A stretch of 63,758 nucleotides of DNA, filler included, from Octopus bimaculoides (GCF_001194135.2; 6 parts of 6 records of this genome joined end to end with filler, not necessarily neighbours in it), one strand, 5' to 3'; numbered from the whole stretch's first letter, positions 55,679-61,731 are shown. Notes: generated by a model from the sequence alone, not told the origin. Numbers and translations are program-made.

Positions 55679-56302
55679 CACACTATATATGTCTATATAT
55701 ATCTATATATNNNNNNNNNNNNNNNNNNNNNNNNNNNNNNNNNNNNNNNNNNNNTTAATTAATTAANNNNNNNNNNNNNNNNNNNNNNNNNNNNNNNNNN
55801 NNNNNNNNNNCTAGCAAATGTGTACGGCAACAAAGACCAAAAAAAAACCAAAAAAAAACCGGAGAACATGGTACAGAATTATGAATACAAAAACAAGAAA
55901 TCACAGCAGGTGTTGTTCGACTGAGAACGAATCAAATTGAGCTGGTGTGTATGAGGTGAAAGACTAAAGGCAGGAACATGGGAGATGGACACCAGAGGTT
56001 TTGATGGTATATGTTTATATATTCGTTTTGCAAGATTCTTGATGTGAATTCATATGTTGAAACAGATATTGTATTTGGGGATGGTCATGTTGCCAGTTTT
56101 GTCAATGAAAATACACACACTATATATTTGGTGTTCACTTGCTTCAGCTTTATTTTATATGAATTGTATTTCGGCCACAGTTCTTTCGTCACACTTCTGT
56201 GACCTCACCAGTGCTCCTTTGCTTTCGATTTTGTGTCTCTCCTTCCTAATGATCTGCCATTTTGTATTCCTGTTGTATGTGTCATATATATATATTTATA
56301 TA

Positions 56303-56530
56303 TTGGGTTGTCCGGAAAGTTCGTGCCGATTTTTAAAGGAAAGAAAAGGGTCAATAAACACTAGCCATTATATCTTTAATCAACCAAATACGAACCATTT
56401 TGTTGCACAATGCGTCTCCATCTTTCCTTTAACTTGAAAATACCCTCTTCCCAGAATTGAGGTGGTTTCATGGCAAATAATTCGAAAGATAAGCTACTAT
56501 AAATCGGCATGAACTTTCTGGACAACCCAA
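56303..56530. mobile_element. Mariner-derived MITE (228 bp)
   Basis: 30-bp TIRs ttgggttgtccggaaagttcgtgccgattt / aaatcggcatgaactttctggacaacccaa, TA on both sides; interior reads FWEEGIFKLKERWRRIVQQNG on the minus strand (mariner C-terminus). Confidence 0.9.
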
Positions 56531-56535
56531 TATTA

Positions 56536-56717
56536 CATGAAGGGATGTTACTATAAGTAAATCCACGCGCTGGAAAGGGATGCTAAAGTCAAACTATTTT
56601 ATCTAAATATACACGTGTTGAAGTCAACTTCAGCACATGTGTATATTTTGATAAAGTAGTTTGGTTTTAGCATCCCTTTCCAGCGTGTGGCTTTACTTAT
56701 AGTAACATCCCTTAATG
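56536..56717. repeat. ~182-bp palindromic (hairpin) element
   Basis: ~90-bp arms catgaagggatgttactataagtaaa... / ...tttacttatagtaacatcccttaatg, centre tgaagt-ca-acttca, fewer than 10 differences. Confidence 0.9.
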
Positions 56718-57422
56718 AAATAATATATTTTAAAAAGTTATATACTTAGTATTAATTTTTTACCTTAATTGGTTTCACATGCTGGCCACTTGATAAAATA
56801 TATATATGTATATATATATATATTAGTATATTATAATGTGCAGGTTTAGTTTTCAATGCTACATACACACATTTTATCAAATTACTCCCTTGATTACAGA
56901 ATTACAAAGTACTGTTGCTGAATGCTCTCGTTATGAGATTTTAAAATAGTAACTGTTTTAATTGTCCCATTTTGATTGAAGATTATCTATGAAAAATCCA
57001 ACATCAGACTCTAATCATGAAACTGATACAACTCCTGTATCTCCGCAGAATTTTTCTTTACAATTTGGGCTAAAATATCTGTATTTTGTGGTAATTATTT
57101 TGAGCAATGATTTATTGAAATACAGTTTTTCATTCTGGTTTCTTCACTTGATTAGAATTTGGTTTGGTTAATGAGACCTTCCGTGTTCCAGTAAATTCTT
57201 TGTCTCAAATTTTACTCAGGAGAATAAATGTTACCTGAGATCGCTTTGTCTTATTCACAAGTGGACAGATGTGTGATTTATTTTTTTTTTTGCATTTAAT
57301 TGGGACTAACCTTTGACCATTGGCCCCTAAATCTCCATATGATAAACATTTGTCAAATTATTCATCCTTTTACTGCATAATCTGATATGTATCCACCTAA
57401 AATTTTTGTACTCTTAACTTTG

Positions 57423-58420: not shown

Positions 58421-58626
58421 AATCCAAAGGAAAGGCTTGGCTGTGTACCTGATGCTGGGTTTGAAGATATCAGAACACATGCATTCTTCCGGCAAATTGA
58501 CTGGGAGCTGCTGGAGCAGAAACAGATAACACCCCCTTACAAACCTGAGCTGCAGTCTGACCGTGACTTGAGGCGCTTTGACGAAATGTTTACCAAGGAA
58601 CCAGTCCAACTTACCCCAGATGATTC
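58421..58626 (+). CDS. aPKC: Atypical protein kinase C, penultimate coding exon (end of kinase domain, AGC C-tail with turn motif)
   Basis: tctctttcag acceptor; NPKERLGCVPDAGFEDIRTHAFFRQIDWELLEQKQITPPYKPELQSDRDLRRFDEMFTKEPVQLTPDD; donor tc|gtacgt (phase 2). Confidence 0.95.
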
Positions 58627-58752
58627 GTACGTAGCAGTGTTGTTTGTTGTGTTCTGCATTCTGACTTTCTTACCATTCTTTACTCTCTTAATTACTCTCC
58701 CTCTCCCAGCTGAAAGGTCCCTGTCTTGTTAGCTACTTGGTGNNNNNNNNNN

Positions 58753-59210
58753 ACTCTGTAAAGTGGTTGGCATTAGGAAGGGTATCTAGCCATAGAAATC
58801 ATGCCAAACAGATGACTGGAGCTTAGTGCAGCCCTCTGGCTTGCCAGTTCCTGTCATACCATCCAATCCATGCCAGCATGAAGGACAGATGTTAAATGAT
58901 GATGTTTGTAGTCAAGTTTTCATCATCATCATCATCATCGTTAAATGTCTGCTTTCCAAGCTGGTGTGGCTTGGACAGTTTTGACTGAGGACTGGCAAGC
59001 TAGAAGGCTGCACCAGGCTCCAATATGGTCTGGCAAGGTTTCTACGGCTGGATGCCCTTCTTAACGCCAACCACTCCAGGAGTGTAGTGGGTGTTTTTAC
59101 GTGCCATGGGTACAAGGAGCCAGTCAGACAGCACTGGCATTGACCATGTTCGGATGGTGCTTTTTACGTGCCACCCGCACAGGAGCCAGTCAGGGGGCAC
59201 TGGCATCGAC
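58753..59210. mobile_element. Tail-to-tail pair of family B SINEs (58753-58905 +, 58921-59210 -)
   Basis: Both carry gtggttggc.tta.gaaggg.atc.agcc and end in (GAT)n tails facing each other. Confidence 0.8.
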
Positions 59211-60376
59211 AGAAATGAAATGAGAAAAAGCTACAATAACTTTGCCTTTCATCATTTCAGGGTTGATAAGTTAAGTACCAGTGAAACACTAGGGTCGATG
59301 TAATCGACTAGTCCCCTCCCCCAACATTTCAGGCCTTGTGCTTTTAGTAGAAAGGATAATTTTTAGCTTTATGTAAGGTGGCAAGCTGGCCACTAAGAAT
59401 TTTGTCTGTCTTTACATTCTGAGTTCAAACTCCGCCAAGGTCAACTTTGGCTTTTATCCTTTTGAGGTCATTGAAATAAGTACCAGTTATGCACTGGGGT
59501 CAATAAAATTGACCTCAGTCTTGGGCCTTATGCTAGAAAGGATTATTAATAGCTTCATGTACTTTAAGATGCATTGTTCCAGAAAAGCATTTTATTCACA
59601 TTCTCTTGAAAGTTTATAAATTCTGATGTCATTTACTGCCAATTCTCACTGGTAAGGATAAAGTTTCTAAAATGGGAGAAGAAATTTCAAGAATTGCTTT
59701 GATCTGATGGTAAAACATCTGTCATGTTTACAGGACACCTTGGTTCAAATCCCACTGGCAGCCCTTGATCTCTTTTCTATCCAACAGAGTTTTTCAACAT
59801 GATTTTGACATGCTGTCCTCTTATAAATGCGAGTAATGTCTTTCTGTCCGTTATGTTTTTATGTTTAACTCCTAGACTGTTGGTGCAAGGGTAACGAAAC
59901 TCAGACCGGCAATTCTCCCAATCCCAGGGAATGTCCTTAGGGGGTCTATTTTTTTATGGGCTACCTAATTGAAGCCCCACTGACCCCACCTCCTGCTATT
60001 TTTACTATATTTTAAACTAAATGGCATTGGCAACCAAATCGGAGCAATGACAATGAATTTCATACCAGGGAATATCGTAAGGAGGTTCAATTTCTGAAGG
60101 GCCTTTTAAATGGGACCCCACTGCCCCTACTATTTTTGTGGGTAGAGAGTTTGGAATGGGGTATCAGATAATACCAGGAGATACATATACAATGAATGTG
60201 TCCGAGTCCATTACATTACACAAAGGGAGAGGGCCATGAAGCATGGCCGGATAGTGGGGCTGAAGGCCTCAAAAGTGCCCTCCGCAGGAGCTATCCTCGT
60301 TCTTTATGTTCTTCAAGATCCACTGTACTAAACAAGAATTACTTCATACTCTTTTTTGCCTGTTTTTGTTTTGCAG

Positions 60377-60464
60377 GAACATCATTGACAAAATCGACCA
60401 AACAGAATTTGACGGCTTCGAATATGTGAATCCTCTGCTGATGTCGATGGACGACCCAGTCTGA
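60377..60464 (+). CDS. aPKC: Atypical protein kinase C, last coding exon
   Basis: ttttgcag acceptor; phase matches the upstream donor (TC+G = Ser); NIIDKIDQTEFDGFEYVNPLLMSMDDPV*. Glu in the hydrophobic motif FDGFEY is diagnostic of atypical PKCs. TGA at 60462-60464. Confidence 0.95.
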
Positions 60465-61179
60465 GGCCCCAGCGCCATGCTCGTTAACTCCTCTCCATTC
60501 CTAACTCTACTCCTGTCCTGTTCTACTCTTCCAAAACAAATAATTCTAACCTGTGACACCTTACCTAAAGACTTAATCTTAATCTGTGTTAAGACTGATC
60601 TTAACATGCAGTGACATCTTACATTAAGACCGATCTTAATCCAAATACGACCTGAATTACATCTGCCTGATTTGATTTGCTTCTTTTTTTTTTTATATAT
60701 ATATTTTTTTTTATCTGACTTAACATGACATGAAGATATATGATATAATATACAATACGACAGGTGGCCATCCACAGAGAAGGGATTGTCCAAGAGTCTC
60801 AGACTTGTCATTATACCTTGATAACCCAACAAGCATTCCAACCATAACTGAAGGTTTATTTGCAATTATTTTTTTTTTACTATTATCATTTGAAATTTTT
60901 TGTTTGTTTTGTTAATTTTTGTTGTTTCTTTTTTTGTGTGATTTTTTTAACATTCCCTACCCCACCACCAACACCATTGCCAACAACAACAACAACACTT
61001 CTGCTACTAGTACCACCACCACTAATAATTACTATTTTGTTTTTTGTTTTCTGTGTGTGTGTGTGTGTGTGTGTCTGTTTAAGGTTTTTGTTTTTTTTCT
61101 CTAGTATAAACTTGGCTATCCCCTGTTGTGCTGCGAGGGTGATACATACATATATATATATATATATAGGCCTAAGTAT

Positions 61180-61336
61180 ATATTATTTATTTAAAGGACA
61201 CAATACATGTCTTAAGTGCTACTGATAGTTTCATATGTTGAGAAATATCTCTAACATATTCATCAGACACAAGCCACATATCGTATATGTGGTTTGTGCA
61301 CTTAAAGACATGTAGTGTCCTTTAAATAAATAATAT
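61180..61336 (-). mobile_element. 157-bp mini-element: ~39-bp inverted repeats enclosing a hairpin and a hammerhead ribozyme
   Basis: tattatttatttaaaggacacaatacatgtcttaagtgc (61181-61219) / gcacttaaagacatgtagtgtcctttaaataaataata (61298-61335). Confidence 0.8.
61216..61270 (-). ncRNA. Type I hammerhead ribozyme, intact core
   Basis: Minus strand GUGU CUGAUGA AUAUGUU A GAGA UAUU UCUC AACAUAU GAAA CU AUC AG UA GCAC: stem I 4 bp, stem II 11 bp, stem III 3 bp, GUA site. Confidence 0.75.
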
Positions 61337-61731
61337 TTATCTCTCACCAGATGGAGTACTTTTTTTNNNNNNNNNNNNNNNNNNNNNNNNNNNNNNNNNN
61401 NNNNNNNNNNTTAATTAATTAANNNNNNNNNNNNNNNNNNNNNNNNNNNNNNNNNNNNNNNNNNNNTAAATACCAAAAAAGGGGTTTTGTATGATCGTGT
61501 ATAGAGGAATATATTATTTTATTTAAAAGAGTTCCAACTCTGTCTGTTTTTTATGTTTTATTTATATTCTTGTAAAATTAATGTGGGATATAGAATATTG
61601 AATATATAATATATAATATAAAAATAAATGGTAAAATGAAATGAAGTATTGAATGTCTTATTGAATATATGAAATATGTCTTATTGAATATATGAAATAT
61701 TGAGTATTCAATATAGAGAATTAAATATATA

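What the first reader, a model, noticed from the sequence alone, without database searches (positions are those of the whole stretch)
61180..61336. 157-bp inverted-repeat mini-element carrying an intact hammerhead ribozyme, antisense to the aPKC 3' end
Seen: the minus strand folds by eye into a complete type I hammerhead (CUGAUGA core, 11-bp stem II, GAAA, 3-bp stem III, GUA site, 4-bp stem I; predicted cut between 61220 and 61219). It is preceded by a 13-bp hairpin (61267-61297) and wrapped in ~39-bp near-perfect inverted repeats. The left arm ends exactly at 61219, the first base after the predicted cut. The other arm (GUGC) competes with stem I (GUGU) for the same GCAC, suggesting active and inactive folds. 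Known: Penelope-like elements and retrozymes carry hammerheads, and Penelope copies can have inverted terminal segments. Inference: this is a very small non-autonomous ribozyme retroelement (retrozyme-like) family with a built-in conformational switch.
Basis: partly seen in the sequence, partly recalled or inferred. Interest (0 to 1): 0.85.

Follow-up and report, generated by a model that had tools for sequence, protein, structure and literature searches.

The report
Foldback mini-element with hammerhead-like side hairpin
About 715 bp downstream of the octopus aPKC stop codon lies a 157-bp DNA palindrome with an extra 49-nt hairpin in one arm that matches the hammerhead ribozyme consensus; it is most likely a dead relic of a known ribozyme-carrying retroelement, not a new kind of switchable mini-element.

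Summary
On the minus strand, 61270-61216 reads GUGU/CUGAUGA/11-bp helix II/GAAA/3-bp helix III/GUA|GCAC. The predicted cut falls between 61220 and 61219, inside a 157-bp inverted-repeat unit (61180-61336). The motif is rarer than chance allows: about 6 per Gb in random sequence, so 1e-5 to 6e-5 expected for this piece.

Three points change the picture:
- With the 49 nt 61220-61268 removed, the rest is one near-perfect foldback (53/52-nt arms, 3-nt apex).
- Both strands fold equally well, so the palindrome is a DNA-level feature.
- No Rfam hammerhead model reaches E<=10, even on a 71-nt stretch. The G10.1-C11.1 pair and the extra nucleotide after A9 are both absent.

The host is Octopus bimaculoides. 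I could retrieve no other copy and no orthologous locus, so family status, target-site duplications (TSDs) and covariation remain untested.

Best reading (about 0.45): a solo relic of the hammerhead-bearing end of a Penelope-like or retrozyme-type retroelement, made palindromic when it inserted and locked in an inactive fold. Main rival (about 0.33): a foldback MITE or local inverted duplication with a chance hammerhead match. The kind is known and the interest is modest.

The parts
61180..61336 (.). Whole 157-bp inverted-repeat unit, 27.6% GC over 61177-61339. The pairing can be extended to 61177/61339 with one mismatch.
   Evidence: minimum free energy -70.6 kcal/mol (minus strand) and -72.8 (plus strand), z about -14 on both
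61180..61219 (.). Outer part of the left foldback arm (40 nt). On the minus strand it is the 3' arm and begins with GCAC, the 3' strand of helix I.
61220..61268 (-). 49-nt side hairpin present in one arm only. It carries all invariant hammerhead nucleotides plus helices II and III. In the minimum-free-energy fold, CUGAUG pairs with UAUCAG.
   Evidence: deleting it leaves a 108-nt near-perfect hairpin
61260..61266 (-). CUGAUGA box (C3-A9)
61233..61259 (-). Helix II: 7 bp, bulged A, 4 bp, UAUU loop. The closing pair is A10.1-U11.1, not G-C.
61220..61232 (-). GAAA box (61232-61229), helix III (A-U, C-G, U-A) with an AUC loop, and the GUA triplet. The predicted cut is after A61220.
61267..61270 (-). 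GUGU, the 5' strand of the 4-bp helix I. Two of its nucleotides lie in the 49-nt insert and two in the foldback arm.
61216..61219 (-). GCAC, the 3' strand of helix I. In all unconstrained folds it pairs instead with GUGC of the opposite arm (61301-61298).
61269..61297 (.). Apex of the foldback: 13 + 13 nt around the loop CGT at 61282-61284. It has one A/C mismatch on the minus strand, which is a G-U pair on the plus strand.
61298..61336 (.). Outer part of the right foldback arm (39 nt)
61325..61330 (+). AATAAA inside the right arm, the first plus-strand poly(A) signal after the aPKC stop codon. Its mirror copy on the minus strand is at 61186-61191.
61142..61168 (.). (AT)13 microsatellite 11 bp from the left end, with (TG)13 at 61052-61078. 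This is the AT-rich microsatellite setting typical of some PLE insertions.
   Evidence: PMC8557442

Best explanation
The unit is a DNA-level foldback with 53/52-nt arms and a 3-nt apex. One arm holds an extra 49-nt side hairpin. On the minus strand, that hairpin plus its immediate flanks forms a complete type I hammerhead consensus.

Most likely it is a single, dead relic of the hammerhead-bearing terminal (pLTR/3') region of a Penelope-like element, or of a PLE-dependent retrozyme-type derivative. Proposed history (inferred):
1. A heavily 5'-truncated copy of about 105 nt was laid down in AT-rich, microsatellite-flanked DNA.
2. An inverted copy was made against it, by snap-back or inverted-copy synthesis of the kind that often gives PLE insertions inverted repeats.
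3. The polymerase skipped the stable side hairpin, so only one arm kept it.

At this locus the ribozyme is predicted to be off. GCAC is held by the opposite arm, and CUGAUG is held by UAUCAG.

Its likely present-day effect is as a long double-stranded hairpin in any transcript that crosses it, and as a supplier of an AAUAAA signal.

Shown: the anatomy, the foldback with its insert, the strand symmetry, and the rarity of the motif. Inferred: the PLE origin, the snap-back history, and the inactivity.
For: - The full core and three helices are in type I order. This is the only such hit in the piece.
- Chance rate is 5.8 per Gb, or about 0.9 per Gb with helix II of 7 bp or more. That is about 5-30 chance hits in a genome of about 2.7 Gb (genome size from my own knowledge).
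- Penelope elements are among the most abundant octopus retroelements, with 31 recently active families in O. vulgaris. Canonical PLEs carry hammerheads in their pLTRs.
- The shape fits PLE minimal hammerheads: helix II longer than usual, helix I of 4-5 bp, and most genomic copies solitary and truncated. The D. virilis variant also has a bulge inside helix II and a small helix III.
- C15.2-G16.2 (GAAAC...GU) is present, although my descriptor did not require it.
- PLE insertions are strongly 5'-truncated, often have an adjacent inverted copy, and favour microsatellites, with (TA)n reported for the Naiad clade. Here (AT)13 lies 11 bp away.
- The nearest-neighbour penalty for the active fold is 7.4-8.0 kcal/mol. 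Experimentally validated coral, mussel and axolotl hammerheads show 4.0-7.6, so the penalty is no argument against it.
- The 60,000-copy axolotl family HHR_Amex2 has U.U at 10.1/11.1 and, in the cloned Ax353 copy, a GUA triplet. Such deviations occur in real families.
Against: - No Rfam hammerhead model reaches E<=10, even on 71 nt.
- Two features that make PLE minimal hammerheads non-random are absent: the nucleotide between A9 and 10.1, and the G10.1-C11.1 pair. Loop 3 (AUC) is not palindromic.
- An 11-bp helix II rules out the usual loop 1-loop 2 contacts.
- No reverse transcriptase or endonuclease remnant, and no second hammerhead, lies in the 5.5-kb piece.
- The palindrome is strand-symmetric. 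The piece holds three other inverted-repeat mini-elements, so a DNA-transposon or foldback origin is an easy alternative.
- Helix I straddles the insert boundary.
- No other copy or orthologue could be examined.
Confidence: 0.45

Rival explanations
1. It is a foldback MITE, or another DNA-level palindromic repeat, whose 49-nt side hairpin matches the hammerhead consensus by chance. No ribozyme ancestry or activity is involved.
For: - Both strands fold equally well.
- With 61220-61268 removed, the element is a near-perfect 108-nt hairpin. That resembles the neighbouring 192-bp foldback at 56531-56722.
- The piece also holds a mariner-type MITE and another inverted-repeat element.
- Tc1-mariner, piggyBac and MITE families are abundant in octopus.
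- Rfam hammerhead models reject it.
- G10.1-C11.1 and the 9/10.1 nucleotide are lacking.
- Helix I has only 4 bp, includes a G-U pair, and is split by the insert boundary.
- A genome-wide screen would give about 5-30 chance matches. The first stage read an unknown number of windows.
Against: - The chance expectation for this piece is only 1e-5 to 6e-5.
- GAAAC sits as an asymmetric 5-nt bulge exactly where a hammerhead needs it. Palindrome decay would not create that.
- C15.2-G16.2 is present.
- No convincing TSD is visible. TA at 61177-78/61338-39 is possible but uninformative in AT-rich DNA.
- Real PLE hammerheads should greatly outnumber chance ones in a Penelope-rich genome.
Confidence: 0.33
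2. One reading: the inverted-repeat-wrapped 157-mer is itself the mobile unit of a very small non-autonomous hammerhead retroelement (retrozyme-like) family. Arm pairing against helix I acts as an on/off switch.
For: - The unit size and low GC fall within non-LTR retrozymes: 150-450 bp repeats, circular RNAs of 170-400 nt, and family consensus lengths of 51-972 bp, with frequent solitary monomers.
- Retrozyme copies that overlap exons tend to lie in 3' UTRs.
- Permuted at the cut site, the 157-mer would be a highly self-paired RNA like retrozyme circles.
- Competing inactive folds are normal for such RNAs.
Against: - There is no tandem copy and no second hammerhead. Nothing can therefore be excised or circularised from this locus.
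- The pairing is symmetric between strands and near-perfect, as expected of DNA palindromy rather than a selected RNA fold.
- The active fold is about 16 kcal/mol worse than the foldback in the full unit, which leaves little room for switching.
- No family member was found by any route.
Confidence: 0.12
3. It is a locus-specific inverted duplication, from fold-back repair or replication, of about 105 bp of ordinary downstream sequence. It is not a transposable element. The hammerhead-like hairpin was skipped when the copy was made.
For: - The 3-nt apex and the arms identical apart from two indels and one transition fit a recent snap-back event.
- There is no clear TSD, and no other copy in the piece.
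- Microsatellite-rich, AT-rich surroundings are prone to such events.
Against: - It does not explain why the skipped hairpin carries a complete hammerhead consensus.
- Several unrelated inverted-repeat elements nearby suggest mobile foldbacks are common here.
Confidence: 0.08

Closest known systems
Minimal type I hammerheads of Penelope-like elements (Cervera & de la Pena 2014, PMC4209133)
   Same: - CUGAUGA / GAAAC / GUH core in type I order.
- Helix II longer than usual, helix I of 4-5 bp, and a short helix III.
- Mostly solitary copies from truncated elements.
- Low intrinsic activity expected.
- The host genome is rich in Penelope elements.
   Different: - No extra nucleotide between A9 and 10.1.
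- A-U rather than G-C at 10.1/11.1.
- Helix II of 11 bp rather than 6-8 bp.
- A non-palindromic loop 3.
- No adjoining PLE body.
- Embedded as a side branch in a perfect foldback.
Metazoan non-LTR retrozymes (Cervera & de la Pena 2020, PMC7229834; Li et al. 2026 preprint)
   Same: - Small, AT-rich and non-coding, with a type I hammerhead.
- Unit length inside the known range.
- Strongly self-paired RNA.
- Solitary monomers and 3' UTR locations are documented.
   Different: - Not tandem.
- No canonical helix I (6 bp) or helix II (4 bp), and no loop-loop contacts.
- The unit ends lie at the tip of a palindrome, not at cleavage sites.
Foldback / palindromic MITEs
   Same: - Long, near-perfect inverted arms with a tiny apex.
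- AT-rich ends, small size, no coding capacity.
- Similar elements lie nearby in the same piece (56531-56722; 56300-56533).
   Different: - Carries an asymmetric 49-nt hairpin with a complete ribozyme consensus.
- The TSD and copy number are unknown.
PLE head-to-head (inverted 5'-truncated) insertions (Craig et al. 2021, PMC8557442)
   Same: - Inverted repeats made of the element's own terminal sequence.
- Strong 5' truncation.
- A microsatellite target.
   Different: Here both copies stop at the same point (a 3-nt apex) and total only about 157 bp. One copy lacks the hammerhead hairpin. Nothing of this size is described in the papers I read.

Membership tests
Hammerhead ribozyme (type I) | Invariant core CUGANGA ... 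GAAA ... UH | tested here: met
   CUGAUGA 61266-61260, GAAA 61232-61229, U61221, A61220
Hammerhead ribozyme (type I) | Three helices around the core, with helix I open and helices II and III closed by loops | tested here: met
   Helix I has 4 bp including one G-U. Helix II has 7+4 bp with a bulged A. Helix III has 3 bp with a 3-nt loop.
Hammerhead ribozyme (type I) | Recognised by curated covariance models (Rfam hammerhead families) | tested here: not met
   No hammerhead family appears at E<=10 on 5.5 kb, 217 nt or 71 nt.
Hammerhead ribozyme (type I) | G10.1-C11.1 closing pair, and loop 1-loop 2 tertiary contacts (helix I about 6 bp, helix II about 4 bp) | tested here: not met
   A-U at 10.1/11.1; helix II 11 bp; helix I 4 bp with no loop 1.
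Hammerhead ribozyme (type I) | Core conservation and compensatory changes across copies | not testable with these tools
   No other copy was found. Octopus genomic DNA could not be reached.
Hammerhead ribozyme (type I) | Site-specific self-cleavage | not testable with these tools
   This needs in vitro transcription. The folding penalty of 7.4-8.0 kcal/mol is comparable to validated ribozymes at 4.0-7.6.
PLE minimal hammerhead | Helix II longer than usual (6-8 bp) and a short helix I (4-5 bp) | tested here: met
   Helix II has 7 bp, then a bulge and 4 more bp. Helix I has 4 bp.
PLE minimal hammerhead | [quoted passage not shown] | tested here: not met
   CUGAUGA is followed directly by A10.1, which pairs with U11.1.
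PLE minimal hammerhead | Palindromic 15.2-16.2 and loop 3 (capacity to form dimers) | tested here: inconclusive
   C15.2-G16.2 is present, but ACUAUCAGU is not self-complementary in its centre (by inspection).
PLE minimal hammerhead | Located in the pLTR or terminus of an element with an RT/GIY-YIG open reading frame | tested here: not met
   No such reading frame appears in the piece. The piece ends 30 bp beyond the element, and comparison with octopus PLE consensus sequences was not possible.
Non-LTR retrozyme | Two or more tandem units, each with a hammerhead | tested here: not met
   Single unit, single core.
Non-LTR retrozyme | Small AT-rich unit (150-450 bp) that folds into a highly paired RNA | tested here: met
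   157 bp, 27.6% GC, z about -14.
Non-LTR retrozyme | Expressed as linear and circular monomer RNAs | not testable with these tools
   No RNA data are available.
MITE / foldback DNA element | Terminal inverted repeats, small size, no coding capacity | tested here: met
MITE / foldback DNA element | Target-site duplication of fixed length | tested here: inconclusive
   Only TA (61177-78 / 61338-39) can be proposed. A TTAA reading would need a 26-bp perfectly palindromic target (by inspection).
MITE / foldback DNA element | A multi-copy dispersed family | not testable with these tools
   No eukaryotic genome collection is searchable. There is no second copy in the 5.5 kb.

The most novel reading that the evidence does not exclude
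The foldback is not incidental. Octopus would then carry a family of about 157-nt hammerhead elements whose RNA, cut at 61220/61219 and permuted, is a branched rod. These would re-insert by priming at the AU-rich tip of the long hairpin on (TA)n targets, giving one-unit copies that look like inverted-repeat MITEs. That would be a retrozyme lineage disguised as foldback DNA elements, with the arm helix gating the ribozyme.
Probability: 0.08. Interest if true: 0.6.

Novelty: new member of a known kind. Interest (0 to 1): 0.28.

Why it matters
If the hammerhead ancestry is real, this would be a cephalopod example of the PLE/retrozyme hammerheads already known across metazoans. I found no paper in the searched library that describes an octopus hammerhead. 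It would also be an unusually small head-to-head relic, which may say something about how such insertions are resolved.

For aPKC itself, the practical point is ordinary. A roughly 52-bp perfect inverted repeat and the first AATAAA after the stop codon both lie in or near the 3' UTR. There they could form double-stranded RNA and influence 3'-end choice (inference).

If the match is chance, the lesson concerns method. Consensus-only hammerhead calls inside palindromic repeats need copy-level covariation before they are believed.

Tried and rejected
- **Rfam scans at three scales.** They return only generic hairpin and miRNA-like chance hits, and no hammerhead.
- **Search for other copies by DNA pattern.**
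  - The arm pattern and the core pattern in JGI metagenomes gave 0 hits.
  - Bacterial and archaeal genomes gave 0 hits.
  - The viral collection gave 28 single hits to a 16-nt pattern, never paired, which I treat as chance.
- **Search for other copies by protein.**
  - A six-frame peptide concatenate against 5.8 billion proteins found nothing.
  - A 44-aa frame against 1.84 billion cluster-representative proteins returned one repeat protein, P0166, at 23% identity. I judge it spurious.
- **Orthologous or same-species locus via exact protein look-ups.**
  - P0001, P0045, P0046, P0047 and three window ORFs are not on record.
  - The O. bimaculoides gene is on record, but it spans 192 kb, so no DNA was returned.
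- **Full-text search for the element's sequence strings.** 0 papers.
- **The thermodynamic argument against activity.** I dropped it after the controls. Validated coral, mussel and axolotl hammerheads carry similar penalties.
- **A custom covariance model from four validated hammerheads.** I abandoned it because MAFFT misaligned helix III and gaps could not be set by hand.
- **The TTAA/Kolobok boundary reading.** I consider it unlikely, since it needs a 26-bp perfectly palindromic target. It is not formally excluded.
- **tRNA/SINE origin.** No tRNA was found.

Full report
**Where the piece comes from**

The two open stretches on the plus strand, about 58421-58626 and 60369-60464, splice into the C-terminus of an atypical protein kinase C. 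The 97-residue peptide is 100% identical to an Octopus bimaculoides protein (exon edges). The stop codon TGA is at 60462-60464. The finding therefore starts 716 bp downstream of the stop codon, on the opposite strand.

No AATAAA or ATTAAA occurs on the plus strand between the stop codon and the element. The first one, at 61325-61330, lies inside the element's right arm. The 3' UTR may therefore run into the element, but that is not shown.

**Checking the observation**

Read on the minus strand, the sequence is:

GUGU (61270-61267) / CUGAUGA (61266-61260) / AUAUGUU-A-GAGA UAUU UCUC AACAUAU (61259-61233) / GAAA (61232-61229) / ACU-AUC-AGU, sharing A61229 / A61220 / GCAC (61219-61216).

That is the full hammerhead core with helices in type I order. 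The inverted repeats and the inner hairpin are also there.

I wrote a deliberately lenient descriptor with these requirements:
- helix I of at least 4 bp;
- helix II of at least 4 bp;
- helix III of at least 3 bp with a 3-8 nt loop;
- G-U pairs allowed.

Its results:
- It finds only this site on either strand of the piece. A looser core-only scan finds nothing else credible.
- It finds nothing in 40 Mb of Markov-chain sequence built from the piece.
- It finds 13 sites in 2.2 Gb of random sequence with independently drawn bases, or 5.8 per Gb. Only 2 of them have helix II of 7 bp or more.

The expectation for this piece is therefore about 6e-5, or about 1e-5 at the observed quality. A whole octopus genome of about 2.7 Gb (size from my own knowledge) would hold about 5-30 chance matches on its two strands. 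The motif is real and unusual for one window, but it is not impossible as a product of a large screen.

**What the element really looks like**

If the 49 nt at 61220-61268 are deleted, the remaining 108 nt form one near-perfect hairpin:
- the arms are 53 and 52 nt and the apex loop is CGT (61282-61284);
- 49 positions match, with one transition mismatch and two small indels.

Three things follow:
- The '39-bp arms' are its outer part.
- The hammerhead-like hairpin is an extra branch present in only one arm.

That branch contains every invariant nucleotide and helices II and III. Helix I is made of two nucleotides of the branch plus two of the arm (GUGU) against four nucleotides of the arm (GCAC).

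The striking coincidence that 'the arm ends at the first base after the cut' is therefore the boundary of the branch. It lies two nucleotides beyond the base of a stable stem, and it needs no cleavage event to explain it.

The two strands fold equally well: -70.6 kcal/mol for minus and -72.8 for plus, both with z about -14. Each strand has one G-U pair where the other has a mismatch. This is the signature of DNA palindromy, not of an RNA structure selected on one strand.

The piece contains three more inverted-repeat mini-elements:
- a mariner-type MITE with 36-nt inverted terminal repeats (TIRs) and flanking TA (56300-56533);
- a 192-bp foldback (56531-56722);
- a 314-bp element (58762-59075).

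The inverted-repeat wrapper is thus commonplace here.

**Is the hammerhead a member of the family?**

Core and topology are met. No Rfam hammerhead model reports the site at E<=10, whether I give 5.5 kb, 217 nt or 71 nt. The best hits are chance miRNA-like hairpins.

I compared the site with the published description of PLE minimal hammerheads.
- Features that fit:
  - the longer helix II;
  - the 4-bp helix I;
  - solitary occurrence;
  - C15.2-G16.2;
  - a bulge within helix II and a small helix III, as in the D. virilis variant.
- Features that are absent:
  - the nucleotide between A9 and 10.1;
  - the G10.1-C11.1 pair (A-U here);
  - a palindromic loop 3.

These absent features are the ones those authors cite as showing that their motifs are not random.

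I first took the folding energies as evidence against activity. The active secondary structure is 7.4-8.0 kcal/mol worse than the competing extended hairpin (CUGAUG/UAUCAG) in a minimal context. It is about 16 kcal/mol worse in the full unit.

I then ran the same calculation on experimentally validated hammerheads from coral, mussel and axolotl. Their sequences come from the supplement of PMC7229834. They show penalties of 4.0-7.6 kcal/mol. The minimal-context penalty is therefore not informative, and I withdrew that argument.

The axolotl HHR_Amex2 family has about 60,000 copies and weak activity. It has U.U at 10.1/11.1 and, in the cloned Ax353 copy, a GUA triplet. Deviations like those seen here therefore exist in real families.

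**Attempts to find relatives**

None of the collections I could search by DNA holds cephalopod genomes.
- Pattern scans of metagenomes, prokaryotic genomes and viral contigs found nothing meaningful.
- I translated the element in six frames and searched the large protein collections for spurious ORFs called over other copies. That gave nothing, apart from one unrelated repeat protein.
- Exact look-ups of octopus aPKC proteins either failed or hit a 192-kb gene for which no DNA is served.

Copy number, boundaries, TSDs, covariation and the orthologous empty site all remain untested. These are exactly the tests that would decide the matter.

**Weighing the explanations**

Penelope-like elements are among the most abundant retroelements of octopus genomes, with recently active families. 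Canonical PLEs carry hammerheads near their ends, and most genomic copies are solitary, truncated remnants. PLE insertions are also heavily 5'-truncated, often carry an adjacent inverted copy, and favour microsatellites, with (TA)n reported for the Naiad clade. An (AT)13 tract lies 11 bp from the element.

Real hammerhead remnants in this genome should therefore greatly outnumber the 5-30 chance matches. I cannot count them, and I do not know whether octopus families look like this one. The individual features, taken together, are roughly neutral:
- C15.2-G16.2 and U7 count in favour;
- A-U at 10.1/11.1, A17 and the foldback context count against.

My estimates are as follows:
- About 0.45: a relic of a PLE or retrozyme-type hammerhead-bearing terminus. 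It would have been made palindromic by inverted or snap-back copying that skipped the stable side hairpin. This history is an inference, not shown.
- About 0.33: a foldback DNA element with a chance match.
Against it stand the lack of any tandem copy or second ribozyme and the DNA-level symmetry.
- About 0.08: a purely local inverted duplication.

**How it most likely works now**

As a ribozyme, probably not at all at this locus. It would need antisense transcription, and in the full unit GCAC is taken by the opposite arm and the core by UAUCAG.

Any transcript crossing the element would form a duplex of about 52 bp with a side branch. The arms also carry mirror-image AAUAAA signals. Effects on aPKC 3'-end formation, or on double-stranded-RNA pathways, are plausible but inferred.

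**Novelty**

Small hammerhead-bearing non-autonomous elements are well documented. They include solitary monomers, units as short as about 51 bp, and 3' UTR locations. At best this is a new member of a known kind, in a phylum-level setting (cephalopods) for which I found no published hammerhead. At worst it is a consensus coincidence inside a palindromic repeat.

Noticed in passing
window 56300-56533: A 234-bp element with 36-nt inverted terminal repeats, 92% complementary (ATATTGGGTTGTCCGGAAAGTTCGTGCCGATTTTTA...), flanked by TA on both sides. It looks like a Tc1/mariner-type MITE in the aPKC intron.
   Followed up: partly
window 56531-56722: A 192-bp near-perfect foldback (88-nt arms, 90% complementary, 16-nt loop) that abuts the MITE above. 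It gives sub-threshold miRNA-precursor-like Rfam hits (MIR5565 at 40 bits against a gathering score of 80), which reflect only the long hairpin.
   Followed up: partly
window 58762-59075: A GC-rich (about 50%) inverted-repeat element of about 314 bp, with 48-nt and 32-nt arm pairs around a (CAT)n run at about 58920-58940. It lies in the last intron, just after a run of 10 N (58743-58752) that looks like an assembly gap.
   Followed up: no
window 61325-61330 (+) and 61186-61191 (-): The first plus-strand AATAAA downstream of the aPKC stop codon (60462-60464) lies inside the element's right arm, and its mirror copy lies in the left arm on the minus strand. The element may supply a polyadenylation signal.
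   Followed up: partly
window 60898-61168: A dense run of low-complexity and microsatellite tracts lies just upstream of the element: T-rich 7-15-nt repeats, (CAA)5-6 at 60981-60997, (TG)13 at 61052-61078 and (AT)13 at 61142-61168.
   Followed up: partly
window 61218-61270 (-): The side hairpin gives a weak, chance-level mir-190-like Rfam hit (14.4 bits against a gathering score of 48, E=1.4), because AUAUGUU...AACAUAU resembles that hairpin. I do not consider it meaningful.
   Followed up: yes
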